Positions 15,564-40,541 of a stretch of DNA of 64,000 nt are shown here, piece by piece; within the stretch, counting starts at the first letter, position 1; each line of letters starts with the position of its first letter. The translations under genes were made by a program, and so were the position numbers. The notes beneath the pieces were generated by a model, which saw only the letters and a program-made list of their open reading frames with translations, had not been told where the DNA came from and did no database searches. This DNA comes from Ostrea edulis (Eukaryota). The stretch is taken from positions 90,148,001 through 90,212,000 of the forward strand of contig NC_079169.1 of assembly GCF_947568905.1 (NCBI RefSeq). Direction: 5' to 3'.

Positions 15564-15617
15564 TAGCTGCAATAAAAAAAAGAAAAAAAATCAGAGAGGG
15601 CTACATTATTGCAGCTA
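15564..15617. mobile_element. 54-bp minimal TAGCTGCA-family TIR element with 9-bp TSD
   Basis: TAGCTGCAATAA...TTATTGCAGCTA flanked by ATGTAACTC at 15555-15563 and 15618-15626. Confidence 0.85.
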
Positions 15618-16049
15618 ATGTAACTCAGACGCAACTGTCTAACTTTAAGACCGAAAGGAGCGTAAAACAACGAATTACTAAGAGATATTCGATGAAAATT
15701 ATGTAGCAATATACACGGCTTTCACCGATGATCTGAAAAAGTCACTTGAAATGGCCGAGTGACGATTGTTTGTAAACAAGTAATTGCGGCTAAAACAGAG
15801 GAAATGATGTTTGACATGTACAACCTCATAAATACGTACGTGCGATGATTTAACAGCGTTTTTACAAGGTGGAATTTTTTTTTTCGAAATTCGGACCATG
15901 GAACTTTAACATTTCACCGGCAGTATGCATATTGAAAATATTTGATTGGCGGATCCAGAACAGTTGGACTGAAATGGTCGTTATTCATATATGCATGTGT
16001 GTTTAACTTTGCGGTCTCTATAACGCTCTTAAATTGGTCTTTTTTGAAG

Positions 16050-16175
16050 TGGACTCCAATCCTTGTGGACATAATCCCTGTCACAACAGTGGACTTTGTG
16101 AGTGGACCCCCAGGAGTAGCCCGCCCTTCATCTGCCACTGCCCCGTGGGTTTCACCGGAGTTAAGTGCGAAAAAG
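16050..16175 (+). CDS. EGF-TM gene exon 4: complete EGF-like module (VDSNPCGHNPCHNSGLCEWTPRSSPPFICHCPVGFTGVKCEK)
   Basis: Six cysteines in EGF spacing C-x4-C-x5-C-x11-C-x-C-x8-C with GFTG. Acceptor TTTTTTGAAG, donor G|GTGAAG, phase 1-1. Confidence 0.92.
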
Positions 16176-20782: not shown

Positions 20783-20940
20783 AAACCCGTCCAAAGAATG
20801 GAAATATGTCGTTTAACGATGTTATCAACCTGATTGACAATAAAACAGCTACCCAGATGCTGGCGGTGTTTGGTGGAACAGTACTCGGCATTATCCTGAT
20901 TATCACAGTCCACTGCTGCAGGGTCATACGTAGAAAGCAA
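20783..20940 (+). CDS. EGF-TM gene exon 5: stalk, transmembrane helix and basic stop-transfer
   Basis: Phase-1 acceptor TTTTCTTTATCAATTTACAAG. Peptide ETRPKNGNMSFNDVINLIDNKTATQ-MLAVFGGTVLGIILIITVHCC-RVIRRKQ, with N-glycosylation sequons NMS and NKT before the helix. The donor is either GT at 20941 or GC at 20937. Confidence 0.85.
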
Positions 20941-21056
20941 GTAGATAAGAACTTTTTTCTAATTATAATATGAATTATAGACATTATAATCTGTTTAATA
21001 TCTAAAACGAATAGGGCCGGACACAACCCATGTTCATATTGTATAATTGAATTCAG

Positions 21057-21246
21057 CTGAATGTTATACACAGGAAGAAGGAGGATTCAGATTACCTGAG
21101 GCGGTTACAGTCGCACGACGTCCCTGATACTCTTCCTCCTGGCTGCTGTGAGCTAAGTAACGTTGTGTTCTTTGAGACATTGTGTTGTCTGGGTATCATC
21201 AAAGAGAACATAAAGAAGGAGGTGGCCGAAGTTAACGTTGACCAGT
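21057..21246 (+). CDS. EGF-TM gene exon 6: juxtamembrane cytoplasmic segment
   Basis: Open frame LNVIHRKKEDSDYLRRLQSHDVPDTLPPGCCELSNVVFFETLCCLGIIKENIKKEVAEVNVDQ. Strong phase-1 donor T|GTAAGT at 21247. Alternative acceptor at 21073. Confidence 0.75.
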
Positions 21247-22051
21247 GTAAGTAACATGGAAAGGAAAACAATATAATGTACCAATAGCTCTAGAACCACT
21301 GTAGTATATTTGCAAACTTTGTATGCCACTTTGGTCAATTGCAAATAAATCTTAAGCTTGTAGTCTATGAATATGAGCTTTTCAAGAAAGTGAAAGAATT
21401 TACAAATACCCTTTCGTCCCTGAAAGACATGTATCTAACGAGACGCTTTTAAGAATATTGATACAGGAAGACATTTACCCCCATTTTATTTTCCCATGTT
21501 TTCACCCTCATTCTTTGTCTGTTTATCTAAAACTGGGAAAATTAGAATATACTCAGAGCTCTGAAGTGGCTTGGAACGAAAATGTTGTTCAATACGTCTG
21601 GGCGAAAATAGCACTGCACGAAAATGTCCCTCTAAACAGTAGTGAAAGAGGTTCGCTCCTGAGTTTTATAGCATGCCAAATTTGTCGGAAGTATACTTTT
21701 AATTTCAACATTGAAGGGAAATCGTGACATCAAAAAGAAAAATCTGAGGTCATAGTGCTTGTTATTGAGCTATAGTATACATGTATTAAACTTGGCCTTT
21801 TTGTGCTTAAATTTTACTTCTGATTTATTTGCATAATGTCGACTTGTCTGTCGGTATCAACACAACATAAGCAATGCAAATTAATCATTACATCAAATAG
21901 ATACATAATCATAAAAGTACCACAAAAGGTACATCATACGCCTGTCGGACAGTTAAGAAAATGTCAGTGCAATATCTGTAACTGTATCCATAATGAGAAA
22001 AAGTCTAGAAAACTGTTTGATTTACTTTTAGCCTTAAAGTAGGTGAAGGTC

Positions 22052-24241
22052 TAGCAGCAATAATGTAGCCCTATCCGACTTTTTTTATTCTGAGGTTTTC
22101 AGGATAGGGCTACAATTCCATAGGATCTCCGTTATGGTGCAAAATAATTTTATGAATAACCAATAATAAGCTCCGTGTATTAGTCCCAAATGTTGTTTAC
22201 ACCAAAAGGAGTACCGCTTTTGTGCTTGGGTATGTAGAATACAGGTGTTTTTCATTAAACATCATGTACAACATGCAAAATTCTTCGTCTGCTCTGCCAT
22301 GCTTGTTATCGCGAGATCTCATAGGTGGATCTACTGAAAAACTTAAACATTGAAAATCTGCGCGAAAATGTAGTTACTCGAGCCACTCTGACAAAGAAAG
22401 AAAAGCATATGGTTGCAGAAAGAATTTACACTCTGCTGTTCGTTTTTTAACTTGATATTAAATCTAAACCTTTTTAATACCGACGAAAGAGCTTTCACCT
22501 CCGTACTTGTCCATTGGTGTAAATACTACCTAATATGGCATATGCAAATAACTTGACAATCGGAAGTTGAAACTTCAGTACATCAAACATGGCGCACAAA
22601 TATGAATCGAGAAATTGGAATATATCGAAATTGTTGAAAACTGTAGAATAGAGCCTCACAAATCGTAAGTTGCAGGTTTTTAATTTATATAATGACCAAG
22701 AAACATAGAATATCATTTTATTTACGTAACACATAGAACTTTCCTTGAACTAATCATGCTCCTACCGGATGTACTTAATATGCGTGTTTTAGGGCATGCG
22801 CCATACGTAAATAGGTAAGAAAATATCAACATCCGATGTATTTTTAGAAGCGGAAGCACGTGTATGTAAATTTTCAATAAACGATGTCTTGGCGATTTGT
22901 ACCTTCCCTGAGCTGAGTCTAGTAAGGCTACGTACATGGCGAAAAGTAAGAGTTGGAAATTAAAAATTTTACTTATCCACCTCAAGAAGAAAATTCATAT
23001 ATGAAATTAAAAATAGAAGAATTATCAGACGGTGAAGTAATCTAGTTACATGCTGAGTGGGGGCGCTATAGGTGCCAAACGAATGAAAGAATCATCTTGA
23101 CTTACAACAAATTTTGATTTCCTTGTTACGGAATCTGATGTCTCAATATAGGCCATGCCATTGGCAAAATAATCTCTTCAGGATTAGCATTACCCCCTCT
23201 TCAGTCAAGAGCTTGTAGTCTTTGTACAAAATATTGCATGCAGAGGGCTGGATAAAAACACATTTAGCTTAGCACATCAGATGATTTTTAAATTTTGATA
23301 TAAATGAAAGCAAGTGGACAATAAACATTGTTGACTGTGGTGTAGGGGCAATAAGTAAAACAGTTCAGACAGGCACTGCCCCATCTGCCAGAACAAGTCA
23401 TTATTGAATCTTGACGAAGATAACTGATGATTTTCTTTTATTGTATGGGGGTTTGTATAGAAATGGGAACTAAAATCAAGTGTATTCCCTAAATTTGAAA
23501 ACTTTAGAGATAAGAATGCATATTTGAATCAAATTCTCTTCGAAATATCATTTCAAAAGCCGAGAAAAATTTAAAAATCTAACGAAAAATTACGTTTAAT
23601 AATGAAAACAATCAACCGGAAGTAGTATTTTTCTCAAAATTTGCTGTAAGGAAATATGATTTACCCAGAAAATGAGGAAAAAACTCTGAATTGGACTTAC
23701 TGCAACTTAATCGTCAGAGGAAATTCAAGCTACTTACAAAAATCGAAGATTCAAATCAAAATATCCTCATAACAATTATTAGTTTAATCACCGAGTTGGG
23801 AGTATATCAATCTCTTTAATCACAACCAGTCGAAAATATTTAAAAAATCATTAAAAATTCATTTCTTGATCAATTTCTATAAAAAAAATTCCCAACGAAG
23901 CGCTTATTTATATTCTCTCAATTTCAGATCAGTGCGCATGTGCAAAGGGAAAATCCCGTCTGAAAATAGAAATGCGCATACCTGATAGGGTCGTATCAAT
24001 ATACGGCCCGCTTCAATGTTGCGACGTCATAGGTCACCTAATTTGCATTAATTATTCATAGTTACAAGGAGCAAGGAAAGTTCTATGTGCGTAAAGAAAG
24101 TCAGCACATGTTTAGAATGATCGAAAATGTTGCGGGAATGAACCACTCCCGCATTTGCACCATTACGGAGATCCCAAGGAGTTGTAGTCCCCCCCCCCCC
24201 TCTCAAAGAAAAAATCGGAGAAGGCTACATTATTGCAGCTA
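22052..24241. mobile_element. 2,190-bp non-autonomous TAGCTGCA-family TIR element (AcademH-like)
   Basis: ~90-bp imperfect TIRs (TAGCAGCAATAATGTAGCCCT.../...GGCTACATTATTGCAGCTA). TSD GTGAAGGTC (22043-22051) / GTCAAGGTC (24242-24250), 8 of 9 identical. Confidence 0.8.
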
Positions 24242-24308
24242 GTCAAGGTCCATCAATTAACTAGCTGCAGAACTGTAGCTCTCTGAAAAAATATTTTGAC
24301 ATAACAGA

Positions 24309-25164
24309 GAGCTACAGAGCCACCCCTTATAAAAACCTTCGATTTACGGTGCACAAAAATCTGCGCACGGTTGAGGCCTTATATCGTTGTATTCTGGAGT
24401 TGCTGTCTCATAAATTTAATATCAAAAAATTCTTAACATATTTTCCTACTATACTTGTGTCTAAACATACCTTCAAATATTCATTAAAGCCCCATACGAC
24501 CTGAAAACTCCCAGCTTCAAATGATTTCGTTTGTTGACGTAGCCATGTTAGGTAGCCGGTCAATTCGAATCCTGGTTAATTTCCATACTTGCACAATAAC
24601 GTCTAGATGTGAACTAATATCCCCACAAATATTTTAGCTAAATATTTTAAATAATATATCACCCCAGTGCCTTTAAATAATAATTATTCAAATAGCTAAA
24701 CTCACGGCAATGTGGCTTTCATTAGTCTGGTCCGGTCTCCATCGCTGCCACACGAGTGTTAAGGACTTTAGTAGCATTTTCATGAATCAAGAGCTTATTT
24801 TACCTTTAGAAAAACTTTATTTTTTTAATTTCTATAAATTATTCGTATTGATAATAAATGAAGAGCGAATACATAACATATAACGAATTTTATGAAAACA
24901 GGGTACGAATTGACCGGCTACCTAACATGGCTACGTCAACAAACGAAATCATTTGAAGCTGGGAGTTTTCAGGTCGTATGGGGCTTTAATGAATATTTGA
25001 AGGTATGTTTAGACACAAGTATAGTAGGAAAATATGTTAAGAATTTTTTGATATTAAATTTATGAGACAGCAACTCAAGAATACAACGATATAAGGCCTC
25101 AACCGTGCGCAGCTTTTTGTGCGCTGTAAATCGAAGGTTTTTATAAGGGGTGGCTCTGTAGCTC
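24309..25164. repeat. 856-bp foldback (259-bp inverted arms, about 4 mismatches, 338-bp spacer) inside the left TIR of the 10.9-kb element
   Basis: Arms 24309-24567 and 24906-25164 read as reverse complements (GAGCTACAGAGCCACCCCTTAT...CAATTCG / CGAATTG...ATAAGGGGTGGCTCTGTAGCTC). Confidence 0.92.
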
Positions 25165-27575
25165 CCCTACTAACGTGTTCGGAACATATTCTTTATCGGT
25201 GTTAAGTAGAGCGTAAAATCAAAGACTATCGAATGAAATATAATCTCGCTGCTCCGAGACTCCAACGCGAGCTACCTGAGACCCGGTGAATTTTCTACCG
25301 GATATGGATGTGCTTTAAGGAATTCCAGTGTTAATGTAAGTATCAATTAGAAATTATGGTATATTGTGCTTTATTTGTTTTTGCAATATATAGATCTACG
25401 TATCAATGCATTATTTTCCTAATGCCATCAGCTAATAAAGCTTAAATAAGAAATGGCAAGAAAGAGTTATCGTCCTTAGATTTGGACCTAGGCCAACTTT
25501 GAAAGAAGTCTTGATTATCGTGAAAAAAATATTGAGAGGACATCTTTCTATTTCAAATGCCATAATTAAATTTTAATGTTGCATAGGGATTGTGTTCAAT
25601 TTATCAAACACTGAAATGTTGCATACAATTTACCATTTCCACGCAGAAAATATTATAGTCTGTTTCATGTTTGAGGTATATACATGTATGTATCTGTGAA
25701 TGTACATGTTACAAGCAAAGAAAGATGCATTGCAAGTTTCTTAAAACTTCTAAACTTAATATTTCTTTGATGGAAACATAATCATTTTCCTAATCTAGCA
25801 GTATAGATAAAGTGAATTTATTTTATGAAGAAAGTAAAGTTTATTGATTGGATCTATTGTGGTGACCAGGGGGTGTGTATACTACCCATTCATAATTTTT
25901 TGATATGTAAAGATTTTGATAATTAAACTCATTGATGCATGCAGAACACCTAAGAAAATTAGAATGAATGAAAAGTATATGACATGTATTTGTATGATTA
26001 TCATTTGGTACATATGTAAATGAAAAATTCCAACTTTTCCTTATATGATATGATTTAATAATAATAATACCATATTTATATAGCACCCTTTTCATCCACT
26101 ATATGTATGTACGCTCAAAGGTGACCAATTATGGATTGTTTTTAAGTGGAGGGAAAGCAACAATAAATGGAAATTAGAACATGACTAGATGTATACATGT
26201 ATATATATAGTAACCATTGCCAAAGTATATAATGTACCAGTGATAATTTTAAAAGTTGATCACAAAACTGCAAAGGACATCAGGGGACAGTGCATTATAT
26301 TTAACAGGATCCTCCCTGTATCTAATGCAGGGTTGTAATTGTCATTTATAACATGTATATTAAATCTGGTAAAAAATGTGCATATTAGACACCAGTGGAC
26401 AATGCATTAATTAAATTTTTTATCAGATCATGCATCAATCTTCTTATATGTAGCAAAATATCGCAGTCTTTGATTTATATAAAATCATAGTAGAAAACAT
26501 TTAAAATTCCTGAGTGGTGCAGGTCTCATACTCATTTACAGATTGGCAGTTTATAGCTCTGAGTTTCTGTAACCACACACATGTATTACTAATGTTTATT
26601 TATGCAAGCATTTATGATATATATTAATCATTAACACATATATTAATGTGACGGGACAATATACATGGATATACATCATAACTTTTTCCTTTATTGATAC
26701 ATTATAAGCAGTACATATTTTCATAAGTCATTTCTAAAAAAAAAAAAAACAATCCTTTTATGAATGAAATACCTACATGCATTTCTGATCTTTTTAATTA
26801 ATTTAGATTTACTTATTCCAATTACAAACTTATAATTACAGAAACACACATGTAATAATATCAATAATCTTTTTCATATTTAGATTAGTCATGTATCTGT
26901 ATGTTAGAGGACAATCTGTACAAAATTTTTAAATCTTAAATCAAATAATTGAATCACAATTAGGATTATATTGCACTACACTGTAATTAACTATTGTTTT
27001 AATATACATCAACTATATTTTGTCTGTAAGAAACCTTTGCTGTATCATTTTTAGTATTACATTTCGCAACATAATTAAACAGTTATAAGTCTCAGAAATC
27101 AAAATTGAGCTGTGATCATCCAGAAGCTGTTCTAGAAATTTAGGAGAAGAAATTATTTTGCATGATCATATTACATGGATTTTTTTTTTCAAGTTTGGCC
27201 AAGTTAGGATCATAGTGTGCACTGAGTATTATTTAACCTAAAGTAAAGAATTTTGTAATTATAAGCTCCCTTTAATAAAAAGCTGACTGTGCAATGTTAA
27301 TTATTTTACATGTTTTAGTTTGTGCTATATATTTAACTGAATTGCCTTAAATTGTAAAAGAAATTGTGAATTAAATACAATTGTAACTGATCAAAATATT
27401 TATTATATTGCATGTTGATGGAGTTTTGAAAATTTAAAAGCATAAATTAAGGCATCAAATAAATATGGTGTTTCTGACCAAAATTTAAACACACTACCCT
27501 TAGTTTTTAAAATAAACATATATTGTTGAAGAGATCATTGAAGAAACATTGTTTGACATCTGTAATTCAATTTTA

Positions 27576-28766
27576 CATACATGCCAACTTTTGAAAATCC
27601 CCATGGGGGATTTTTCGCGCGACGACCTTTTTTCAACGCTCAAAATTCACGACATTTTACCACGAAAATAAATATTTGTCTTTTCAAATAAAATATCAAT
27701 CTAATCATTATACATGTATCATACATCAAGTGTGTTTGACCATCAACTTTAACAAAACTATATTAAAAAAAACTTTGAAAGATATAGATAAGTATTTTAT
27801 TAAAATCATCTATTCAGCAAAAAATCCTCTCCAACAAGTCACATACATATCAAATAATACTTAAAGTTGCATCCTTTTACACCATATACACATTGGCTGG
27901 TCTATATATCAACATTTAAATTAAAGCACATGCATTTAGGTACGACTACAAAGGCGATCTTGCTTGTCTGTAAACAATTTCATGGGCTTGCAGAGTCTGG
28001 TGGAACAATCTGCATTGCAACCAGAAAAGGAGTGATCTGCCCTGCTATGAAGTTTGCGAACAAAACCTTTGCACCCATGACATCTGAAATAATTACCAAG
28101 AAAACACACATCAAAATATACGTTTTTACTTGTAAAATACTTGTAAAATATAAAAATAAAAATTCAGTACAGACTTGTGCAAATTACGCATCACAAAGTC
28201 TATTGAATACTACGCTATATAGACTATGTAATACATCGCTATAGACAGATAGATTCGGGTAGCCTATATTATCATAGTTGGAAAAACATATATTTTACGT
28301 ACCTTTAATATTGCATATTTTGGATGCTGTCAGCGAGAGGCAAAAATCGGGAATGTCCGATTGTTTCGTGGTGACACTATTATCATTGCCATTCACGTTT
28401 GTGTAAAGGATATGTCAATTTGAAATCCGTCTTCCCGATTAATTACTATCAAAACATGCTTCGCACTGTCCAATAAGCACCCCGACACGGGCAGACCAAG
28501 GAAATTACATCACTCCGATACCATGCGACACAGGTAAACAGCAATGGCTGACTATTGTCCCGATTTCTGATTGGCCAGTTCAGAAATGACGCGGGGTTTC
28601 AAATTCCGGTTGGAAATGGGGGTTTGTTGTCGTAAAATGGGAGACATTTTTAGAAAATCGGGATTTCGGGGTATTTTTGCAATCCCGATCGGGATATCGG
28701 GATTTGCCTTTTCAACTGCTTGAAATCGGGAAAATCCCGCACAAATCGGGAAAGTTGGCATGTATG
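27576..28766 (-). mobile_element. Internally deleted hAT-like DNA transposon with 6-bp TSD
   Basis: TIR CATACATGCCAACTTT / AAAGTTGGCATGTATG; TSD ATTTTA (27570-27575, 28767-28772). Minus-strand remnants FPW..C..C..H, KQSDIPDF and DVMGAKVLFANFIAG..PFLVA..PDS resemble hAT transposase N-terminal motifs. Subterminal AATCGGGA repeats. Confidence 0.72.
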
Positions 28767-29014
28767 ATTTTATCTATAATAAGGAATTTTAATCAAACTA
28801 AATCTAAAAGTTTCATTGACAAGTGAAAATAAGTTCAATAAGACACAATTAATTTGTTTAAATGGAGATTGTGATCAGAATATTAAAACTTAATTGTTTA
28901 CAGTTAAAGAAAAAAGTTACGAATTATATGTTCCAATCTGAATTGAAATTAGACTGGTATATTCGACTCGTCTTCGGTACACCTCAATACAAGGAAGTGT
29001 ATCATAGAGAAGTG

Positions 29015-29497
29015 TATGGAATCCGGATAGGGCCACGTAGTTCACTATCGCACCATCGCGCCATCGAGGTTTGGGTCGATGGTGCGATGGCGCGATAATG
29101 CGATGACGATGGCGCGATGGTGCGATGACGATGACGCGATGGTGCGATAGCGCGATGACGATGGTAAGATGGCACGATAATGCGATAACGATGGTGCGAT
29201 GGAGCGATACTGCGATGGTACGATGGCGATGATGCGATAACGCGATATCATTATGCCATCGGTATCGCGTTATCGCATCATCGCCATCGTACCATCGCGT
29301 CATCGTAGTATCGCTCCATCGCACTATCGCATCATCGTTATCGCATTATCGTGCCATCTTACCATCGTCATCGCACCATCGCGTCATCGCACCATCGCGC
29401 CATCGTCATCGCATTATCGCGCCATCGCACCATCGACCCAAACCTCGATGATGCGATGGTGCGATAGTGAACTACGTGGCCCTATCCGTATTCCATA
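29015..29497. mobile_element. 483-bp CpG-rich foldback MITE, IS3EU-like (copy 1)
   Basis: TIR TATGGAATCCGGATAGGGCCACGTAGTTCACTATCGCACCATCG. Interior is a CGATG block followed by a CATCG block. 6-bp TSD GAAGTG (29009-29014, 29498-29503). Confidence 0.88.
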
Positions 29498-29897
29498 GAA
29501 GTGGGATTCTTTTTCTCTTGCCATTATTTTGACTTGCACAGCAATTTATATTTTTAGCCTAAATTTCAAATCATAATACATATTTGTGCATGTGTCTGCT
29601 TTCAGTGTACTTTTTGGGGACTTTGAGTGATCGATTCACCACCCTTTGAACAAATGTATTTTGAGATCCTCAAAGGAATCCTAGATTTGTCAAGGTATCA
29701 CATCTTCCTATAATTGAATGTAATGATTATGTTTTCAAGATTTTAAAGGAGATTATTCTGTCTACAAAGTGAGATCATTTTATCTGTCCTTAAATTTTTA
29801 ACCAAGCTATACACTGCATGCAGATAATTTTGTTTCATAAAAAATTGTTATAGTATTTAAACATCTTTTTATGCATGGTTGTATATGTACATGTAAC

Positions 29898-30367
29898 TAT
29901 GGAATCCGGAAAGGGCCACATAGTTCACTATCGCACCATCGCATCATCGAGGTTTGGGTCGATGGTGCGATGGCGCGATAATGCGATGACGATGGCGCGA
30001 TGACGATGACGCGATGGCGCGATGACGATGGTAAGATACCGCGATAATGCGATAACGATGGTGCGATAGTGCAATGGAGCGATAGTGCGATGACGCGATG
30101 GTACGATGGCGATGATGCGATACCGTCATCGCGCCATCGGTATCGCGTTATCGCATCATCGTCATCGTACCATCGCGTCATCGTAGTATCGCTCCATCGC
30201 ACTATCGCACCATCGTTATCGCATTATCGCGTCATCGTACCATCATCATCGCGTCATCGCACCATCGCGCCATCGTCATCGCATTATCGCGTCATCGCAC
30301 CATCGATCCAAACCTCGATGGCGCGATGGTGCGGTAGTGAACTACGTGGCCCTATCCAGATTCCATA
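29898..30367. mobile_element. 470-bp CpG-rich foldback MITE, IS3EU-like (copy 2)
   Basis: Same TIR family as copy 1. 6-bp TSD TGTAAC (29892-29897, 30368-30373). Confidence 0.88.
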
Positions 30368-30896
30368 TGTAACAGAACTTATGAAGTACATGTATATGTG
30401 TTCAGTGTTTTATTATGTAAAATCTACTTAGGGGTACAACTACATTTACAAATTAATTATGTACATGCACACAAAGGCACAAACACAATTTCTACCTCAA
30501 AACTTTCATCAGATACAAGTCAAAAAATTTAAGATTATAAGAATTAAGCTAATAATTATACATGTAGCAGATCTTAGAAATATTTTCATGAAGAGATACA
30601 TTATTGCTTATGCTATCACTTTGCCTGTATTTCTGTCTTGGTTGAGTATATAGTACACTTGCAGATGACACACACTGTTTCATGGAATACTGCATCTTAA
30701 TTACTGACAAATCGTATAATTTCATAATATTACATTTTTTGTTACATACTAAATAAGTGCATGATTTTTTTCCTTTTAGAAGCCATGTTTTAATTGCTGC
30801 CCATCAAATAGTACTGTGTCTTGCATGTGTAAATTGTAAGTATTCAGTGTCTTAGTATAAATCGTTAGTATTTTGAAGCATGATGTCACAGTTAGT

Positions 30897-31462
30897 TTAT
30901 TATGTCTCCCCTCTTCCAGGGGGATCGAGACATTGTTTTTGTATTTTCTGTATGTCCATCTGTCTGTCACAAATTCTTGTGAACGCTTCTCCTCCTACCG
31001 TATATGGCTTATCCGCTAGACTTGAAACTTTGTACAATGCTTCAATGCCATATGGAGATGTGCATATTGTTGGGACGGGAGGATCCAATTATTTTCCTAA
31101 AAGTTACAGTGGATCTAAGAGGAGTGGAAGATGTTTAAATAGCTTGTGAATGCTTCTCCTCTGATATGGATTATCAGAGTTAGACTTAAACTTTTCACAA
31201 TACTTCAATGCCATTTGCAGATTGACATATATTGTAGGGATAGGAAGATCCAATTGTTTTCTTAAAATCTTAGGGGTGGAGGGTATAAAATAATTTGTGA
31301 ACACTTCTATATGGCTTATCGGAGTTCATAAATGCTTATATGCTTCTGTTCATGCTTTCTCCTCAATACCATACAGTACAATAAGGGGCAGTTTCATTTG
31401 GAGAACTTCCAATTTGGGGAGCTCAGGGAGACATTTGTATTTCCTAATAAACAATCTTTAGT
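30897..31462 (+). mobile_element. Degenerate HINE with ~170-bp core repeats
   Basis: 5' TTATGTCTCCCC...GAGACATTGTTTT followed by a (TCTG) tract; cores starting TTGTGAAYGCTTCTCCTC; 3' subterminal GGGAGACAT. Confidence 0.65.
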
Positions 31463-31656
31463 TTCAAATTGTGATTATGGTATTTTTGTTTCTCTTCTAT
31501 GAAATGTTAATTATATTAAATATCTATTTTGAAAAAAAAATCATAAGATATATATGTAAAGTTATAATTAAAATTTTTCTTTCTGGTAAAATAGGCATAG
31601 TGTATATGCAGTGTAGGTAGAGATAAATCACATAGCAAAGAAAAATTCCAAATTGA

Positions 31657-32715
31657 TTTTAGCTCACATGAGCTGAAAGCTTGAAAGAGCAATTCTGATA
31701 ACTTTTTGCTGTCATCAGTCCATCTGTACAACCTTTTCAACTTCTCCAGAACCATAGTGTTAATTTCAGCCTAACTTGCCACCCTTCACAGGGGAGATAA
31801 TCACAAAATAGGGTGGGTTCATTAAAAGTCTTCTCAAGAACCACAGGGCCAGAAGAGCTGAAATTTACAAGCAAGCTTCCTGGCATAGTGTAGATTCAGG
31901 TTTATTAAAATAATGACCCCCTAGGGATAGGATGGGGCCACAATAGGGGATCAAGGTTTTACATGCAAAGGTATAAGGAGAATCTTTTAAAAATCTTCTT
32001 CTCAAGAACCACTGGGCCAGGAAAGCACAAATTTGCAAGAAAGCTTCCTGACATAGTGCAGATTCAAGTTTGATAACATCATGGCCCCCGGGGGTAGGAT
32101 GGGGCAACAATTGGGGATCAAAGTTTTACATACAAATATATAGGGAAAATATAACATCTTCTCAAGAACCAATGGACCAGAAAGTAAGACAAAAGTTTAT
32201 ATTTACATGAAAGCTCCCTGACATAGTGCAGATTCAAATTTGTTAAAATCATAGCTCCCAGGGGTAGGATGGGGCCACAATAGGGGATAAAAATTTCACA
32301 TACAAATATATAAGGAAAATCTATTGTTTTTTAATTTTAAAGAATCACTGGGCCAGAAAGTCTTACATTTATGTCAAAGCTTGCTGACATAGTGCAGATT
32401 TAAGTTTGTTAAAATTACTCCCCCCCCCCCCCCCCCCCCCCCCAGGGGAAGGGTGTGGCCACAATAGGGGATCAAAGTTTAACATACAAATATATAGGGA
32501 AAATCTTTTTCTCAAGAAGCCATTGGGACAACGAAATTTACATTTACATGAAAGCTTCCTGACATAGTGCAGATTCAATTTTGTAATAATCATAGTTATG
32601 GGGGTAAGTTGGGTCCACAATAAGGATCAAAGCTTTACATGCAAATATACAAGAACAATCTTTAAATATGGGCCAAGGTAACTCATGCGAGCAATGTGGT
32701 CCATGGGCCTCTTGT
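31657..32715 (+). mobile_element. CvA/pearl-like HINE with ~5 copies of a ~165-bp satellite-related core
   Basis: 5' TTTTAGCTCACATGAGCTGAAAGC. Cores CTCAAGAACCACTGGGCCAG...AAGCTTCCTGACATAGTGCAGATTCAAG at about 31833, 32001, 32161, 32341 and 32511. 3' GCGAGCAATGTGGTCCATGGGCCTCTTG. Confidence 0.88.
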
Positions 32716-33639
32716 CTTTAATGCTATTGATACTAAATTGAAACAGAATAGATATCTAGAAGGAGTAATTAAGACAATCAATCAGTATTCATATTTCATA
32801 CTGGAAAATAAAATTTAGATAGCTTATATTGATCATTGTGAATTTTTTTTTCTTTCAGAGATTCATTTTGAGGAAATAGCTGGTGTGCAGTGCACATTCC
32901 TAAATGAATTCATCAGTTTACATTAAGGATCTACCTTCAAATCCTGTAATCTGGGATGCTCTAAAGTGCATGTCACAGACTAAAGTTATAAAAATAACTT
33001 CCAAGAATTTTTAAGAAATTGTTATAACTTTGAAATGTATGTATATACATGTATACTGATATTGAATTAAATTTTATAAAATTTCAACATCTGATTTTAT
33101 GTATATATAGACATATTGTAAAAAAAATTCCACTCTAAAGGTTTAATTTCTTTAATATTTAAGACTTAAAAAAAACTTTTGCAGATACAGTGGTGTAACA
33201 TTGTCTTACTTTCTGATCAATACATATAGATAAGAAAACTATGTATATTTCAATAAATGTGGAAAATTTTCAACCATTGAATTTCCATTTATGAGTAGTA
33301 ACTTGTACATAGTACTTCCTAACCAACTTTGATACTGTATAACTATAACTACCTGCTTGCATGCATTGCAGAGCACGTACAGCCGTGGTAATAATTCACA
33401 TTTGCTGATGAATTGCTTTAGCATAAAGAGTAAAATTAGTACGTTAAGTTTTAAATTTATGAAAATGCATATTAGGCTTTTCACAGATATTTCTTAAAAT
33501 ATATAGAAAATATGTATATATTCATATAATTGTATAAATCCTGCTAATCTAGCTTCTTCCTAAGTGAGGTGTATGGCACGCCATATTTATACAATGTATC
33601 TACCGGGTATTCCTTTAAGGATTTCATATATAATTTATG

Positions 33640-34240
33640 AAATATCTTCTATTTCTGATATCTAATAAATCTTATAAGATATATATCTCATATAATATAT
33701 AGTTTATAAAATATTTAAGATATATATTATAAATTATGAAAGATATCTCCTAAGCCTTATAAGATATCTTGTATATCAAATGATATAATGTTTAACAGAT
33801 ATCTTATAAAACATAAAATATCTTAAATGTTTTATAAGATTTCTCACAAGCTTTATAAGTTATCTTACATATCTTATAAGATATCTCATAAACAATTTAA
33901 AAAAAAATATAGCTCAAACTTTGATATATCTTATAATATACATGCAAGATATCTTGTATGTTTTATGATATATATCTTATAAAAGTAAATTCATATGATA
34001 CATTATAAAGTTAACAAGATGTCTTATAAAATTTCGTTTTTGAGATATCTTATTAAGTTTGAGATATCTTAAAAGACATAAGATATATGTTTTAGAAGAT
34101 AACTTATAAAATATATAACATATTTTATCATCTTTTATCAGATATCCAATTATAAAGGATACAATTAATATATTTCATAAACTTTAGAAGATATCTTGAA
34201 AGTTCAATAACATATCTTATAAAATTTATGAGATATCTTT
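33640..34240. repeat. Degenerate AT-rich array built from palindromic ATCTTATAAGAT / AGATATCT modules
   Basis: Perfect palindromes at 33669-33680 and 33869-33884, with many partial copies throughout. Confidence 0.7.
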
Positions 34241-36291
34241 AAAGAGGAATAAATCTAAAAATAGAATGCTATAGAAGTGTAGTAATAGAATCTAACAATA
34301 ACATCAATTTCATTTTTTCTGTGACGATGATTAACTTATAATGTGATATATTATTTTGTGCAGTTTATATGAGTCGCAAATATACTATAAGGCAGGAATC
34401 GCACATTTTCTTCACCAATTCTATTTTCAATGCAAAATATTCTCTTTTTGTAACCAATGCTGAAGATAACTTAATTTGTTAAAAATCCTTGACAAGAGAA
34501 AAAAAATTGATTTGTCCTGTGACTTGCCCACTCTACAAAATCCTAAATCGGGGAGGGGGAACTTTTCTCCTAAGTTCGAAAAAATTCATGATTTCTTAAT
34601 TCGGAGGGGGAGGGGGTGTTAAAAACTTACTACCAAAGATAATTTTTTTTATACAAATTCTCCATGAATACATGCATATATGTTTGCAGTTCTGTATTAC
34701 CCTAAATACCACTATAAATGAAAAATGAAAGAAAGCAGTCTCCCCAATTTCTTTATTTGCATATGTTATAAACAATGGAATTATTACCGTTGCCCCCCCC
34801 CCCCCCCCCCCGAACAAAAGAAGAAAAGACCCTCCCCCCTCATGACACGACAATAAGACTAAATATCAGATAAACTACAATCTAAATCTTTAAATGACTT
34901 TAACTTCCTGAGCTTTTCACTATTTCACAATCATCGCTGGTATGACAGTACTTAATTGAATTTTCTAATTTGCATTGATGATACATGTCTATTACAGTAT
35001 ATAGAAAATGACTATAGCTTTGGCATATTTATTTCCGGTTTCCTTCACTGCGGAATTTGACCTCACCTCTAACCTTTTAATGGGTCAAAAAACCCACGTG
35101 GTGTAAATTTAAATAACAATAACGTTAGTAGGGGTATGTTATGTCAAAATATTTTTTCAGAGAGCTACAGTTCTGCAGCTATCAATTAACCTGAAATGCA
35201 AATTGGATCACTCTTCCTCTGAGACGAAGGTTGTGACTACATTTCGGTGTAATACCTGTATCCATAACGAAAAAAATCTGTAAAACTTCGACCTACTTTT
35301 AGCCCTAAAGTAAGTCACGGTCCACCAATCCAGCTGAAATGCAAAGTCACTCTTACGCTTCTTTACAGCGTCATTACATAATACGTCCAGTGAGTGCATG
35401 GTTTGTCCTATTAACTTCTCTTACCATTGGTATTGAAGATGTTCATGTGGGAAAGATTTTGATATTCAATTTTTAAAGAAAGAAAATTACACGTTGTTGA
35501 ACTTAGTCAGTTTTGAGGAAATATTATAAAGTGATGCAAGAGTAAAATGGTTTGTCCTTGTAACTCCTCTCACAGTTTTGAAGTTAAGGCCTTTGTAAAC
35601 AACTTTAAGATGTGCGTATTGTAAGGATTTTGCTTCTCAACATATGAACGTCTTGTTGAGGGAGGTTTAAGGAGGTATGAGAACCCAAGAAATTCATAAT
35701 AAAAGGAATGTGTTCCATTCATATGATATTGAGCTGATCTACATGTATGTAATAGAGTTTGCATTAACTCTTGCAAAATTACATTTTTATGTTACATTGA
35801 AAATTTAAAAAAAAAATCCTAATTCTGCAAGAATTTTGAAAACGGAATTTTAAAAAGTGGATAACAATAATGGATAACAAATTTGAATTATTGGTCAAAA
35901 TACAAAATTTTCATACACAATGTCTGGAAAAATGATATAGAGGTTTTTTAGAATCGGTATTCTGTTTGGAAAAAAATAACCAAATTGATGAATTCACAAC
36001 ATTTGAATCTCTACTACTTGCACCATAAATTACAAAATTGAAGTACACGTCCAGGATTGCAAATATTGACAATAGATTGGATAAAACAGAAACTATAAAA
36101 TCGTGCAGATTTAGGACATTTTGATGAAACAATCCTTCCGCCATAGAATGTAGTCCTTTCCAAATCCTTTCAAAATTTGTATCGACATGAAATTTTTCAA
36201 CTGGATAATTTAAAGTGATAAATGTACATGTATAATATAAGTTCTTGATATTAAATTTATTTTTCTTTGATTAACTTTCCCTCTATTTCAG

Positions 36292-39200
36292 TGGTGTCTG
36301 ATTTGAAGCTTGCCAGAAGTTTATCTAAGAGTAATTCAAAATCCAGGGATAGATTAATCCCCGACGAAAAAGGAAGCAAACAATCTTTAAGGTCCAATCG
36401 TAGCAAAATACCCTCTGACCACAGAATTAACCAGCAAAAGAGGCCCAAATCAGAAAGTAAGACATGCAATTTTGCTAGGGAAAGTCATGATTCTTATGTC
36501 ATCAATGTTGAAGGTAACGAGACGGACACATCCAGCACTAAATTGAACATTGAATATCCAGAGTTGCGTAGGAATTCTTCTAGATCGTTATCCAGGTCAA
36601 CAGAGGGTGTTGATCAGACTGTGAAAGGAATGAAGTGTAGTTGTGGTAAATATACTACAATGGAAACGTCAAAAACCAGAACAGATAGTGAAAGACCCTA
36701 TGTAGCTACGTCTGATCAAATAATCCACGCGGAGGATATTCTTGCCGAGAAAAACATTAGAGTCCTGTCACATCCCAATTCATTAGTTGGAGTCCAGCAT
36801 ATGTCGAATCAACATGGCAGACCAATCTCAAAACTTAAAAGTGAAAGTTTTCGCAGTTTGAGTTCTAGAACACAACACGAGGACGCTATCCAAACAAAAG
36901 GATCACGACAACATACATCACAACCTACACCAGATATAGCAACCACGGACAAACGAGAGTACTGCAGAGTGTGTCAACGAAATCCAAGTTATCAATCAAT
37001 CCTTAAAACTCAACAGAGGCAGTATGTTCCTGACATTTCGTCAGGAAGAGGGAAAAGAATTTCAGCTCAAACACAGACTACTCCAACTCTCCTTTCTGTA
37101 GTAGAACGACCAATATCACCGCCACCCCCGGCACCCACATCAGAACCACCACTCTCATCACATTCTGGATTTGCACGTGTAGATAAGACCCAAAATTTCC
37201 CATCTTGTACATGGTATGCAAATCCTCTGTCAGCTCAAACACAGACTACTCCAACTCTCCTTTCTGTAGTAGAACGACCAATATCACCGCCACCCCCGGC
37301 ACCCACATCAGAACCACCACTCTCATCACATTCTGGATTTACTCGTGTAGACAAAACCCAAAATTTTCCTTCTTGTGCATTGAGTACAGGTCATTTTCTG
37401 GGCTTTGATAAGTCAGCACAAACACAGACAACTCCATCTCTACGTTCTGTGCTAGAACGACCAATACCACCACCACCACCCCTGGCACCCACATCAGAAC
37501 CACCACTCTCATCACATTCTGGATTTACTCGTGTAGACAAAACCCAAAATTTTCCTTCTTGTGCATTGAGTACAGGTCATTTTCTGGGCTTTGATAAGTC
37601 AGCACAAACACAGACAACTCCATCTCTACGTTCTGTGCTAGAACGACCAATACCACCACCACCACCCCTGGCACCCACATCAGAACCACCACTCTCATCA
37701 CATTCTGGATTTGTACGTAAAGACAAATCCCAAAATTTTCCATCTTGTGTATTGAATCTAAGTCCTGTTCTGGGCTGTGATAAGTCGGAATTTACTGATG
37801 TAAACAAGAAGCGTTTCTCATTGGAAGACTATACTGCAGATCATCAGAGAGATATGCAGGAAAGCTATTCCCATTCTCCTAGTAACGCAATTCCAAATGA
37901 TGACGTTACGTATTTACAGCAAAATGTAAGACAGGGCAGTAATCCTACAGTTTCAGTGCCACATTCAACGTCGCTCCGTGGATCTGAACGTGTTCGAAGG
38001 ATTACTTCAGACCAAGAGGAGAGGTTACAAGGAAACTACATTATTCGACCAGGAAAATCGGCCCATTATCTCCAGGATCGACTACAGGAAAACCATTCCA
38101 AATCTTCTCATTCTGAGAATTACATGAAAGCAGACGGAAAAAATATATTGTCAAATCATAAATTTTCAAATCAAGAATATGGTGATGACCCTACAAACCA
38201 GCTTTCGGGAGATGAGAAGATATGGTATATTGAGAATTACCACCCCATCGGTACTCGTATGCACGCAAGAAGAAGTTATTCACAGCCAGCAGTATCTCAC
38301 AAATCGAACGATATTTCAGATCGTAATGAAATTTACTACAACGAATACTACGCACCAAAATATTCTGAATATCTAAACAATGAGGCAGAGCATGTTGTGA
38401 TGCCTATATACAAAGTTCCAACCACACAGTCGTCAGCAAACTCGTACCAAACCACGTATCGAGAACATTTTGGAGCCTCTGGTGTGCAGAATATTAGAAA
38501 TCGAACTAGATCAGATCGTCAGTTGGTTGATTCTGGAATTGAAGTCAACGGAAGCAGAGAGACAGACTACTCAGGAGAAAGACATGGACACATCAGATCT
38601 CCACAGCCACAATATCAACAATTACGAGAGAGATATGAGAGATCTGACTACAGCTCGGACAGAGGAAGAGGACAGCGTAGACAATATGATTTCGAATCCA
38701 GATCTTCAAGTAGAGAAGGAAGGTATGACCAAAGACCCTCGAATAACCGTAATTTGGAAAATGACCAACAGGTTTTACAATTTCTTAACGAACGGGGAAG
38801 TGTCAGTAGTTTCGTGGAAACTAACCGTCGTAGTCCACAGGACGCCAGACGATCTCGTTTTAGTAAATACGATCAAAGGCGCCGCTCAGCTCCTTCGGCG
38901 TCGTTTCCTTCTGATTATGAAGAGGAAGACCTGCAGGATGACAACGATGTTATAGAGTATTTACACCAAAAGAAAACTGTTAGTGGTCTGATAGAAAACA
39001 GTCGACAGACAACGCCAAGGACTGTCACTCGGAGATGTGAAAATCGCCGCTCAAATATAGCCGACAACGAAAGAGACAGAGAAAGTGATGAAGAAGTGTT
39101 GTATAACCTCAGACAAAGAAGAAGTGTTAGCGGTAGAAGAGGAACGGATGATCGGGATGTACGAGAAAGGGTTATGCAAAATGTTAAAGAGGATTACGAA

Positions 39201-40541
39201 GATGTGATACCGCAATCCCTGGAAACAATGTCGGGCGTCAATCAAGAATTGAAATACACTAAAATGTTTGCGACGAATTCTACTGTATACCCACCAACTG
39301 CCGCAAAAATAGGAGAGCGAAAGGACATAAGAGTACCCATTATGTCAAAAAATGTGTTTTCTCCACCATCTGCGAGCAGAGAAAATACGCAACAGAGGCA
39401 TACTGCAGAAAATGACGACCCTACAACGCGTTATCAAGATTACTTGAGGAGAAGTATGATTCGTTGGCCCGTGAGAGACATTGACATCAGGCGGTCAAGA
39501 GATGCCCTAAAAGGAAATAGATTGCAAGAGTTGTTGAACAAAGACAATACATCGTTTGAGCAACCTCGAGACCAAACACATGCAGCTCGCACTCCATCAA
39601 GAAAAGCATACGCAAGAGGTCACCATGGAAACAACAATAATATAGGATCAAGAGCGTATCTAAATGACACACGGGAAGAAACCTATGACTATTCCCAAAA
39701 CCATATCAATCGAAGAGAGGGGATTCAGTATAATGAAGAACCTTATTGTGATAGAAATGAAACGTTTACTGGGGATGAAAAAAATAGTTTTCTGGAGCAA
39801 GTAGAACAAAGAGGTAACAATAACAGGATGGCTTATCAGAGCAGAAATTCGCGAATGAGAGAACGATCACAAACTTCATCTGAAAGAGCCAAAGATCTTC
39901 CATGGAACGCATTGCAAAACATATCTCAATTAGGAAACGATAGTAGTTTAGACAACGGAAGACTCAATCCGAAACACAGCACTCCAAAGGCGTCTCCCAT
40001 TGATCCAGAGCTACACAGAATTTGGGAAAATCGAAATAATCAAGAGTCGGGGTCTCTGCTAGAACGTCTGCGCAACAGTCAGACGATTCAGGATAAGTTT
40101 TTCTCTAGATCTGATAATTTAGAAAACACTGAAACGGGAGGTGACGTAGACTGCGACAATTGGAATACAGATGCTGAGTCCAGAGTGGGTAGAAGACGTA
40201 GCAGGGAGAGAGCACTCCACAACCAACAAATCGTCTATAACAATCAGGCCGAACACGTGTCGAGATCCGGGAACATCGGTAATAGTAGCGCACAAACATT
40301 GACTTCTCTTCACGGTGTACCTTCTGCGAGTTTCCACAACAGAGTATCTTCAGCTTTTTTGGGACCCCAAAGCTTACTTGGAGATAAGCAGGAGGCCCAG
40401 AGACAATCATTTATCGGTTGTCACAAGTCGGGTGGAAACACTGTGTATCCTACCGGTCGCAAAAGACAATTCCCGAGAAATTCGGATGCAATTAACTCTG
40501 AAGAATCCAACCAAAGAAATTTTCCACCTCGCGAATATTGA
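36292..40541 (+). CDS. EGF-TM gene exon 7: 4.25-kb terminal exon encoding a Ser/Arg/Pro/Asp-rich disordered region
   Basis: Uninterrupted 1424-codon frame (the track's TTG start is not a plausible eukaryotic start). Pyrimidine-rich acceptor TTTCCCTCTATTTCAG at 36291 needs phase 1, matching the exon 6 donor (T+TG = Leu). The spliced CDS is 4917 nt = 1638 aa plus stop. Confidence in coding status is high; confidence in the join is moderate. Confidence 0.85.
37062..37784 (+). repeat. Four in-frame coding repeats (168/183/186/186 bp) with SAQTQT and polyproline motifs
   Basis: Units start at 37062, 37230, 37413 and 37599. All length differences are multiples of 3. Confidence 0.92.

What the first reader, a model, noticed from the sequence alone, without database searches (positions are those of the whole stretch)
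21960..35355. Two large TIR elements inserted 2 bp apart; empty site recoverable from an in-window paralog
Seen: deleting 22052-24250 and 24262-35190 (13,128 bp) yields AGCCTTAAAGTAG-GTGAAGGTC-CA-TCAATTAAC-CTGAAATGCAAA. This aligns without gaps to the next unit of a ~146-bp tandem repeat at 35300-35344, AGCCCTAAAGTAA-GTCACGGTC-CA-CCAATCCAG-CTGAAATGCAAA; the upstream homology CTGTATCCATAA at 21982 and 35256 also fits. So two related elements hit abutting 9-bp targets within 20 bp. Inference: this is unlikely by chance and suggests target-site preference, either for this repeat or for the end of a resident family member (transposase-guided homing next to its own TIR). I know of no description of such behaviour for Academ-type elements.
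Basis: partly seen in the sequence, partly recalled or inferred. Interest (0 to 1): 0.74.

Follow-up and report, generated by a model that had tools for sequence, protein, structure and literature searches.

The report
Oyster MITEs landing beside each other's ends
Two short non-coding "jumping genes" of one family sit 2 bp apart in an intron of a flat-oyster gene, and a genome-wide count shows the family lands next to or inside the ends of resident relatives about ten times more often than chance; this is a modest bias with known parallels in other transposons.

Summary
E1 (22052-24241) and E2 (24262-35181) have related TAGCTGCA inverted ends and 9-bp target duplications. Removing them rebuilds a site that aligns without gaps (48/59) to the next 146-bp unit.

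Three corrections:
- Neither element is intrinsically large. E2 is a 964-bp long-TIR MITE split by a 9.97-kb unrelated nested transposon. E1 is an ~830-bp MITE type with 1.35 kb of extra internal DNA.
- The "tandem repeat" is two units of a dispersed family (>1,700 candidate loci), like oyster Helentron-derived short arrays.
- The nest lies in the last intron of Ostrea edulis LOC125678011.

Of 11 outward-facing terminus pairs within 300 bp, 8 have gaps of 50 bp or less (1, 11, 17, 17, 20, 40, 43, 50), against 0.5-0.9 expected. The 51-300 bp class (3) matches random expectation. Two further elements sit in the last 8 bp of a resident copy. The 146-bp repeat is not a hotspot (one other independent hit, about one expected).

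Still open:
- Tethering by transposase is inferred, not shown.
- The Academ assignment is untested; a 9-bp duplication fits AcademH and Mutator alike.
- The bias concerns only about 0.2-0.6% of insertions.

Earlier scan notes covered E2 and AcademH copies elsewhere in this genome.

The parts
21979..22051 (+). First 146-bp repeat unit, left piece (up to the E1 insertion point); part of a dispersed short-array repeat family
   Evidence: Alignment to unit 2; family has 1,742 candidate loci
22043..22051 (.). Left copy of E1 target-site duplication, GTGAAGGTC
22052..24241 (.). E1: non-autonomous TIR element of the ~830-bp 'ATAATG' MITE type, 2,190 bp here; older copy (89-92% identical to other copies, one TIR mismatch and one duplication mismatch)
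22730..24080 (.). Extra ~1.35-kb internal segment of E1 that is absent from typical 820-843-bp copies
   Evidence: blastn of five genome copies against the window; junctions
24242..24250 (.). Right copy of E1 target-site duplication, GTCAAGGTC
24251..24252 (.). 2-bp spacer (CA) between the two 9-bp targets
24253..24261 (.). Left copy of E2 target-site duplication, TCAATTAAC
24262..25164 (.). E2 MITE, positions 1-917 of a 964-bp long-TIR (~313 bp arms) 'GAACTG' MITE type; 96-98% identical to genome copies
   Evidence: (I1, I23)
25165..35136 (.). Nested unrelated element X (~9.97 kb, TIR CCCCTACTAACGT, boundaries +/-3 bp). It carries foldback repeats, a 168-bp tandem array and AT-rich repeats, and has no ORF >135 aa
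   Evidence: Right-terminal 436 bp matches 689 candidates and stops at 35135; junctions; repeats; ORFs
35137..35181 (.). E2 MITE, last 45 bp (positions 920-964), 100% identical to genome copies
35182..35190 (.). Right copy of E2 target-site duplication, TCAATTAAC
35191..35252 (+). Remainder of the first 146-bp repeat unit
35253..35354 (+). Second 146-bp repeat unit, the in-window paralog used as the empty-site model
15564..15617 (.). 54-bp mini copy of the same family (two ends only), flanked by the 9-bp duplication ATGTAACTC (15555-15563 / 15618-15626)
21063..21245 (+). Exon of host gene LOC125678011 (Ostrea edulis) upstream of the nest
   Evidence: tblastn of P0001 against the window
36291..40538 (+). 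Last, large exon of the same host gene. The nest therefore lies in a ~15-kb intron that would be ~1.9 kb without E1 and E2

Best explanation
Shown:
- An old ~830-bp-type MITE (E1) inserted into a unit of a dispersed 146-bp short-array repeat, in the last intron of an Ostrea edulis gene.
- A younger 964-bp MITE with related ends (E2) later inserted into a target that starts 12 bp from E1's right end. The two 9-bp targets are 2 bp apart.
- An unrelated ~10-kb transposon is nested 45 bp inside one E2 end, which makes E2 look large.
- All elements of the family make 9-bp duplications.
- The family has a weak palindromic target signal outside the duplication: C at -3 and G at +3.
- Genome-wide, the family's ends lie within 50 bp of each other about ten times more often than random placement predicts. 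No excess is seen at 51-300 bp.
- Several copies sit inside the terminal 8-20 bp of a resident copy.

Inferred:
- The family's transposase, which recognises the shared TAGCTGCA...TGTAGC ends of both subtypes, also binds resident ends.
- That binding biases target capture of an incoming transposition complex to DNA within a few helical turns of the resident end. This is the opposite of the target immunity of Tn3, Mu and Tn7.
- The bias is modest: roughly 0.2-0.6% of insertions go into about 0.03-0.07% of the genome.
For: Anatomy:
- Structure, duplications and empty site.
- E2 is a MITE plus a nested element.
- Relative age: E1 is 89-92% and E2 96-98% identical to other copies, and E1's duplication and TIR each carry a mismatch.
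- Fixed 9-bp duplication: 24 perfect and 5 one-mismatch sites, no 8- or 10-bp cases.
- Target logo from 31 sites: C at -3 in 35 of 62 half-sites against a 19% background.

Genome-wide counts:
- Termini GCTACANNNNTGCAGCTA: 2,978 forward and 3,036 reverse, with 0-1 in the reversed-pattern control.
- Outward-facing pairs within 300 bp: 11 sites, with gaps 1, 11, 17, 17, 20, 40, 43, 50, 201, 215, 229.
- Expected: 0.5-0.9 at 50 bp or less, and 2.5-4.5 at 51-300 bp.
- Poisson P = 1e-7 to 5e-6. Without this locus, P = 1e-6 to 5e-5.
- Conditional binomial P = 7e-5 with this locus and 3e-4 without it.

Independence of the close pairs:
- In the 7 other close pairs, 9 of the 14 elements have both ends in the sequence held. 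All 9 carry their own 9-bp duplication, three of them with one mismatch.
- At C1:97237190 the second element's target is the resident's last 8 bp plus 1 flanking base.
- Five of the 8 close pairs join the two subtypes, so this is not one element hopping locally.
- Same-direction termini are also in excess at 50 bp or less: about 14 non-array cases against about 1.7 expected. They include a second gap-1 case at C2:65567198.

Negative control:
- No family end lies within 300 bp of an outward-facing end of the unrelated X family.
Against: - Counts are small (8 close pairs), and this locus was chosen because it looked odd.
- The expected values assume roughly uniform placement. Only the 51-300 bp class serves as a local baseline.
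- The control with family X has low power, because the number of exact X ends is unknown. Zero observed has P = 0.02-0.46 under no clustering.
- Some same-direction short-gap cases could be slippage duplications of an end rather than insertions. Their far ends could not be fetched.
- No transposase or autonomous copy of this family was identified, so binding to resident ends is untested.
- E1's own target does not fit the C(-3)/G(+3) signal.
- No empty or single-occupancy allele was seen in contigs of four public runs. Short-read contigs break at these repeats, so the test has little power.
Confidence: 0.6

Rival explanations
1. Generic micro-hotspot. Both elements independently chose the same few tens of bp because of a local DNA property, such as the preferred flanking motif, bendability, cruciform-prone DNA, a nucleosome-free patch or intronic open chromatin. 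Recognition of the resident element's end plays no part.
For: - The family does have a sequence preference outside the duplication: C at -3, G at +3, W at +/-2, about 2.3 bits in total.
- E2's target fits that preference on both sides.
- The nest lies in an intron of an annotated gene.
- The excess is only about 10-fold.
Against: - A preference at single positions gives no spatial correlation at offsets of 8-41 bp.
- The pair excess vanishes beyond 50 bp, where 3 are seen and 2.5-4.5 expected. A chromatin-scale hotspot would extend further.
- Several insertions lie inside the resident's own terminal 8-20 bp.
- No end of the unrelated X family lies within 300 bp of a family end (low power).
Confidence: 0.2
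2. Pure coincidence at this locus. Two unrelated insertion events happened to fall 2 bp apart, and the family has no meaningful bias.
For: - With ~3,000-3,800 ends per side, 0.5-0.9 close pairs are expected by chance somewhere in the genome.
- This locus was picked post hoc.
Against: Seven other close pairs exist at independent loci, with distinct gap sequences and (where both ends are held) their own duplications. P is 1e-6 to 3e-4 without this locus.
Confidence: 0.1
3. Preference for the 146-bp repeat. The family targets this short-array repeat family, so two hits in one unit are expected.
For: - Both insertions lie in one repeat unit.
- One other family insertion in a paralogous repeat exists, present twice through a segmental duplication at C5:733348 and C5:918490.
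Against: - That single other independent hit matches the ~1 expected by chance for ~1,600 motif sites x 151 bp x the density of ends.
- It lies at a different position in the unit.
- None of the 7 other close pairs shows the repeat's conserved motif in its gap or in the flanks that were read.
Confidence: 0.05
4. One-step origin. E1, the spacer and E2 moved or arose as one composite, or through aberrant transposition or repair at one element.
For: The ends are related, so one transposase could in principle use an outer pair of ends.
Against: - The outer flanks GTGAAGGTC and TCAATTAAC are different sequences, so there is no composite duplication.
- Each element has its own 9-bp duplication.
- The 20 bp between the elements aligns colinearly with the paralogous unit.
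- E1 and E2 differ in age.
Confidence: 0.02

Closest known systems
P-element double insertions and local self-targeting in Drosophila (for example, two defective P elements abutting at singed-weak, and insertions into or next to a resident P element). Cited from general knowledge. Self-insertions of P constructs are also described in PMC4744444.
   Same: A eukaryotic cut-and-paste element lands within a few bp of, or inside, a resident copy with the same ends. Binding of transposase at the resident ends is the usual explanation.
   Different: A different superfamily (8-bp duplication, 31-bp TIR). P homing was shown experimentally, whereas here there is only a genome census. Here most pairs join two different MITE subtypes.
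Nested and self-insertion of plant MITEs (Jiang & Wessler 2001, from general knowledge; reviewed in PMC5172404)
   Same: High-copy non-autonomous TIR elements are found inserted into one another far more often than chance predicts.
   Different: In plants this is largely explained by TA/TAA-rich targets inside AT-rich MITEs. Here the excess is concentrated at and just outside the element ends, and the target signal is weak and lies outside the duplication.
AcademH DNA transposons (9-10 bp duplications; PMC10045372, citing Kojima 2020)
   Same: The 9-bp duplication fits. Earlier scan notes report intact AcademH copies in this same genome.
   Different: No transposase, helicase or autonomous copy with these ends was found. 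All 29 scored duplications are 9 bp, never 10. Membership is untested.
Mutator-like elements, including MULEs with tandem TIRs (PMC3310237)
   Same: 9-11 bp duplications and long TIRs of 100-500 bp; the E2-type MITE has ~313-bp arms. MULEs with an additional TIR next to the terminal one are known, and nested insertion is one proposed origin.
   Different: No MURA-like transposase is linked to this family. The tandem-TIR MULEs move as units, whereas the pairs here are separate insertions with their own duplications.
Bacterial end-targeting insertion sequences (IS30 and the IS3 family target inverted-repeat ends; general knowledge) and, as the opposite behaviour, Tn3/Mu/Tn7 target immunity (Tn3 immunity is mentioned in PMC3310237)
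   Same: Resident transposon ends influence where a new copy lands through transposase binding.
   Different: These are prokaryotic systems with proven mechanisms. Immunity repels insertions, whereas here the ends attract them.
Cg_HINE: Helentron-derived non-autonomous elements carrying short arrays of 140-180 bp satellite-like monomers in oysters (PMC7492417)
   Same: The host sequence is a dispersed family of 2-4 tandem units of ~146 bp at more than 1,700 candidate loci in an oyster genome.
   Different: Helentron-type flanks were not examined. This concerns only the target DNA, not the two MITEs.

Membership tests
Non-autonomous class II (TIR, cut-and-paste) element / MITE | Terminal inverted repeats | tested here: met
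   E1 ends match over 19 bp with 1 mismatch, and the arms extend ~90 bp. E2 ends are perfect for 45 bp. Genome copies of the E2 type have ~313-bp arms.
Non-autonomous class II (TIR, cut-and-paste) element / MITE | Target-site duplication of fixed length at independent copies with different flanks | tested here: met
   9 bp at 31 sites; 24 perfect and 5 with one mismatch in the nearest-end scan, and no 8- or 10-bp cases.
Non-autonomous class II (TIR, cut-and-paste) element / MITE | High copy number and no coding capacity | tested here: met
   About 3,000 exact ends per orientation; 1,860 candidates for the E2 left arm; no ORF >135 aa in E1 or E2.
AcademH | 9- or 10-bp target-site duplication | tested here: met
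   9 bp throughout. The criterion is taken from PMC10045372.
AcademH | An autonomous partner with the same ends encoding an Academ (DUF6589-like) transposase and a helicase | not tested
   No autonomous copy was retrieved.
Mutator-like elements | 9-11 bp duplication and long (100-500 bp) TIRs | tested here: met
   9-bp duplication and ~313-bp arms in the 964-bp MITE. The criteria are taken from PMC3310237.
Mutator-like elements | An autonomous partner encoding a MURA-type transposase | not tested
   Same limits as for AcademH.
End-directed (self-targeted) insertion | Excess of new insertions at or next to resident family ends over random expectation, with independent duplications | tested here: met
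   8 outward pairs at 50 bp or less against 0.5-0.9 expected, and 3 at 51-300 bp against 2.5-4.5 expected. Duplications were verified where both ends are held.
End-directed (self-targeted) insertion | Dependence on transposase binding to the resident end | not testable with these tools
   Needs a transposition assay or a transposase-DNA binding test.
Helentron-derived short-array element (HINE-like) as the target DNA | Dispersed short arrays of 140-180 bp monomers | tested here: met
   Two units of 146 bp here; 1,742 candidate loci, many with 2-4 adjacent units; pattern described in PMC7492417.
Helentron-derived short-array element (HINE-like) as the target DNA | Helentron-type flanking ends | not tested
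   The flanks of the array were not analysed.

The most novel reading that the evidence does not exclude
The transposase of this oyster family, possibly an AcademH enzyme working with its helicase, uses resident family ends as landmarks for target capture. New copies are then placed at preferred offsets of roughly one helical turn from a resident end (targets starting -8, +2, +8, +8, +11 bp from the end) or into its last 8 bp. This would be a eukaryotic 'anti-immunity' that builds abutting MITE pairs and could seed composite or tandem-TIR elements.
Probability: 0.25. Interest if true: 0.65.

Novelty: new member of a known kind. Interest (0 to 1): 0.4.

Why it matters
If the end-proximal bias is real and depends on transposase, it gives a natural eukaryotic case of transposon ends attracting further copies, the reverse of bacterial target immunity. 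It would help explain how MITE clusters, composite elements and tandem-TIR elements arise.

In practice it also shows that an apparently 11-kb "element" in oyster annotation can be a 1-kb MITE carrying a nested transposon. It also shows that a host intron grew about eight-fold, from ~1.9 to ~15 kb, through this nest.

The effect is small, and parallels exist (P elements, plant MITEs, insertion sequences). It is therefore a useful detail for transposon biology rather than a new principle.

Tried and rejected
- **Wrong-strand pattern.** The first terminus-pair pattern was written on the wrong strand and found nothing. It was corrected.
- **Pattern limits.** Gaps of 0-300 work.
- **Right flanks of the pairs.** Fetching 20-kb regions around the 12 pair loci returned only the left 10 kb of each.
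- **Coding search.** E1, E2 and neighbouring loci gave no transposase. Pfam hits were unrelated: FkbM methyltransferase, cadherin and a weak phage-integrase fragment.
- **Subterminal search.** A search with E2's right subterminal 482 bp, meant to find an autonomous relative, instead showed that 34700-35135 belongs to another repeat family nested in E2.
- **Papers.** The AcademH paper is not held.
- **Earlier notes.** An earlier-findings look-up by sequence was blank.
- **Public runs.** Only Logan short-read contigs were available. They break at these repeats and show only that the E1 left junction exists in runs X1 and (partly) X2. No empty allele was seen, and the test has low power.
- **Alternative alleles via the neighbouring gene.** The protein search found a single Ostrea edulis entry, from this same assembly, and orthologues at only 46-54% identity.
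- **Composite-transposition idea.** Rejected because the outer flanks differ and the 20-bp spacer is colinear with the paralog.


Full report
**What is in the sequence**

- E1 spans 22052-24241. Its ends are TAGCAGCAATAATGTAGCC and GGCTACATTATTGCAGCTA. Its flanks are GTGAAGGTC and GTCAAGGTC.
- Two bases (CA) follow.
- E2 spans 24262-35181. Its inverted ends are perfect for 45 bp (TAGCTGCAGAACTGTAGCTCTCTG...). Its flanks are TCAATTAAC on both sides.

Removing each element with one copy of its duplication gives a sequence that aligns without gaps to 35287-35345 at 48 of 59 positions, across both junctions. In a gapped local alignment over ~109 bp it scores 98, against 21.6 +/- 2.4 for shuffles. 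The period is 146 bp.

A third, 54-bp mini copy of the family lies at 15564-15617. It is flanked by ATGTAACTC on both sides.

**Corrections to the anatomy**

E2 is not one 10.9-kb element. Genome copies of its type are 963-966-bp MITEs with ~313-bp inverted arms. The window matches such copies over 24262-25164 (MITE positions 1-917, 96-98% identity) and again over 35137-35181 (positions 920-964, 100%).

The 9,972 bp in between belong to another family.
- They begin CCCCTACTAACGT and end with its reverse complement.
- The last 436 bp match 689 candidate loci, and every match stops at 35135.
- This nested element X carries foldback repeats, a 168-bp tandem array and AT-rich repeats, but no ORF above 135 aa.

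E1 matches 820-843-bp MITEs of a second subtype at 89-92% identity. It carries an extra 22730-24080 segment.

The two subtypes share 18 of the first 24 terminal bases, including TAGCTGCA and TGTAGC. Both make 9-bp duplications.

E1 is the older insertion. It is more diverged from its relatives, and both its TIR and its duplication carry a mismatch. E2 therefore probably arrived second, with its target starting 12 bp from E1's right end.

**The target DNA and its setting**

The 146-bp unit belongs to a dispersed family. There are 1,742 first-look candidates, and the best matches are 81-88% identical, often as 2-4 adjacent units. This is the organisation described for Helentron-derived short-array elements in oysters (PMC7492417). 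I did not test the flanks.

A protein search identified the neighbouring 1,424-aa ORF as part of Ostrea edulis LOC125678011. The match is 100% identical and lies on a contig of exactly the length of this window's chromosome.

tblastn places the gene's exons at 13117-13290, 13418-13489, 16049-16174, about 20782-20961, 21063-21245 and 36291-40538. The nest therefore fills the last intron. Without E1 and E2 that intron would be ~1.9 kb instead of ~15 kb.

**Family properties**

At 31 independent sites the duplication is 9 bp. The nearest-end scan gave 24 perfect and 5 one-mismatch cases, and no 8- or 10-bp cases.

The duplicated bases themselves show no consensus. Just outside them there is a palindromic signal: C at -3 in 35 of 62 half-sites (background 19%), W at -2, and the mirror image on the other side. 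The total is about 2.3 bits. E2's target fits this signal on both sides. E1's target does not.

The genome (895 Mb) holds 2,978 forward and 3,036 reverse exact ends matching GCTACANNNNTGCAGCTA. The reversed-pattern control gives 0-1.

Requiring a right end followed within 0-300 bp by a left end finds 11 sites. Their gaps are 1, 11, 17, 17, 20 (this locus), 40, 43, 50, 201, 215 and 229 bp (consistent).

| Gap class | Seen | Expected for 3,000-4,000 ends per side |
|---|---|---|
| 50 bp or less | 8 | 0.5-0.9 |
| 51-300 bp | 3 | 2.5-4.5 |

The long-gap class behaves as random and the short-gap class is ~10-fold enriched.
- Poisson P = 1e-7 to 5e-6, or 1e-6 to 5e-5 without this locus.
- Conditional binomial P = 7e-5, or 3e-4 without this locus.
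- With the strict pattern required on both sides, 5 pairs are seen against 0.52 expected (P = 2e-4).

The close pairs are independent loci with different gap sequences. In the 7 other close pairs, 9 of the 14 elements have both ends in the sequence I hold. All 9 carry their own 9-bp duplication, three of them with one mismatch.
- C7:55796796-55797615 (TTTGTCACT) abuts C7:55797633-55797693 (TAAATGCCA). The two targets overlap by 1 bp.
- C6:59176915-59177062 lies next to C6:59177113-59177941.
- C7:68311526-68313340 lies next to C7:68313381-68313474.
- At C1:97237190 an 824-bp copy has the duplication TGCAGCTAC, which is the last 8 bp of a resident 100-bp mini copy plus one flanking base.

Five of the 8 close pairs join the two subtypes. 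Local hopping of one element followed by repair is therefore not the explanation.

Same-direction ends are also in excess at short range. About 14 non-array cases have gaps of 50 bp or less, against ~1.7 expected. They include a second gap-1 case at C2:65567198, and copies that start 15-21 bp inside another copy. I could not read the far ends of these cases, so some may be slippage duplications.

Preference for the 146-bp repeat is not supported. A family end within 150 bp upstream of the repeat's conserved CTGAAATGCAAA motif occurs at only three places. One is this locus. The other two (C5:733348 and C5:918490) are near-identical copies of one event. About one is expected by chance.

Preference for resident family ends is supported by the counts above. 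As a weak negative control, no family end lies within 300 bp of an outward-facing end of the unrelated X family. Its power is low, because I do not know how many exact X ends exist.

**Mechanism**

Shown: sequential, independent insertions, and a short-range excess that appears specific to the family, both outside and inside resident ends.

Inferred: transposase bound to resident ends biases target capture to DNA within a few helical turns.

A motif-based hotspot does not explain the excess, because preferences at single positions create no correlation at offsets of 8-41 bp. A chromatin-scale hotspot should extend beyond 50 bp, and it does not. A structural effect of the long inverted arms themselves, such as cruciform or bent DNA, cannot be separated from transposase tethering with these data.

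The bias is small in absolute terms. About 8 outside cases, plus up to ~14 inside cases, come from roughly 3,500 elements.

**Superfamily**

A 9-bp duplication agrees with AcademH (9-10 bp, PMC10045372). It agrees equally with Mutator-like elements (9-11 bp and long TIRs, PMC3310237).

Earlier scan notes report intact AcademH copies in this genome, but they give no terminal sequence. I found no autonomous copy.

**Alleles**

Contigs of four public runs from four studies confirm the E1 left junction in X1 (35 bp into E1) and partly in X2. They break at the repeats. No empty-site or single-insertion allele was seen, but this proves nothing.

**Comparison with known systems and verdict**

Insertion into or beside resident copies is known for:
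- P elements (general knowledge; self-insertions in PMC4744444);
- plant MITEs (general knowledge; PMC5172404);
- some bacterial insertion sequences.

Tn3, Mu and Tn7 do the opposite (target immunity).

The elements here are ordinary MITEs, and the nest is an ordinary intronic TE nest. The noteworthy part is the statistically supported but modest end-proximal insertion bias in an oyster family with 9-bp duplications, which has not, to my knowledge, been described for this kind of element.

I rate this as a new member of a known kind, with interest 0.4.

Noticed in passing
window 25165-35136: A ~10-kb non-coding element of another family (TIR CCCCTACTAACGT) is nested 45 bp from one end of the E2 MITE. 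Its right 436 bp is 91-99% identical to at least 39 other loci (689 candidates). A ~1.6-kb version is suggested by facing ends at C1:23119354 and C1:23120964. Its duplication at the MITE junction is unclear, because about 2-3 bp of the MITE are replaced.
   Followed up: partly
window 13117-40538: The region belongs to Ostrea edulis LOC125678011, an uncharacterised 1,663-aa protein with no Pfam domain in the large exon. The last intron (21246-36290) holds the whole nest, and the 54-bp mini copy at 15564-15617 lies in an earlier intron. Orthologues exist in Saccostrea and Magallana at 46-54% identity.
   Followed up: partly
window 37062-37786: A 186-bp (62-aa) tandem repeat of about 3.9 copies at 91-92% identity, inside the large exon. 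It is proline- and threonine-rich.
   Followed up: no
window 29009-30382: Two CpG-rich foldback structures built from 8-bp CGATGGYG / CATCGCNN repeats, with arms up to 122 nt at 93-97% complementarity. They lie inside the nested element X.
   Followed up: no
window 31806-32670: Five tandem units of ~168 bp (60-88% identical) inside element X. This is another short satellite-like array.
   Followed up: no
genome C1:91892359-91893063, C9:17608462-17608890, C3:81065724-81065926, C7:1114739-1115048, C3:96660357-96660817: Tandem arrays whose unit begins with the family's terminal sequence TAGCTGCAGAACTGTAGCTCTCTG (periods of about 33-70 bp and ~140-190 bp). TIR-derived mini-satellites appear to have formed several times.
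   Followed up: no
genome C2:107647706-107647952 (locus L033 1272-1518): A 247-bp family copy whose 9-bp duplication CTACAGTTC is itself the inner part of another copy's TIR. An extra TAGC lies before the remaining TGCAGCTA. This is an insertion into a resident TIR, possibly with a small footprint.
   Followed up: partly
family-wide (31 sites in the window and loci L002-L058): The target signal lies outside the 9-bp duplication: C at -3 and G at +3 (56% against a 19% background), with W at the adjacent positions. This gives a 15-bp palindromic target frame.
   Followed up: yes
window 11131-11655: A 174-aa ORF with a weak match to the C-terminal part of the phage-integrase (tyrosine recombinase) domain (E = 4e-5, below Pfam's cut-off). 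It may be a Crypton- or DIRS-like remnant.
   Followed up: no
window 54353-54490: A run of 138 N (gap or masked stretch), well outside the finding. It was left untouched.
   Followed up: no
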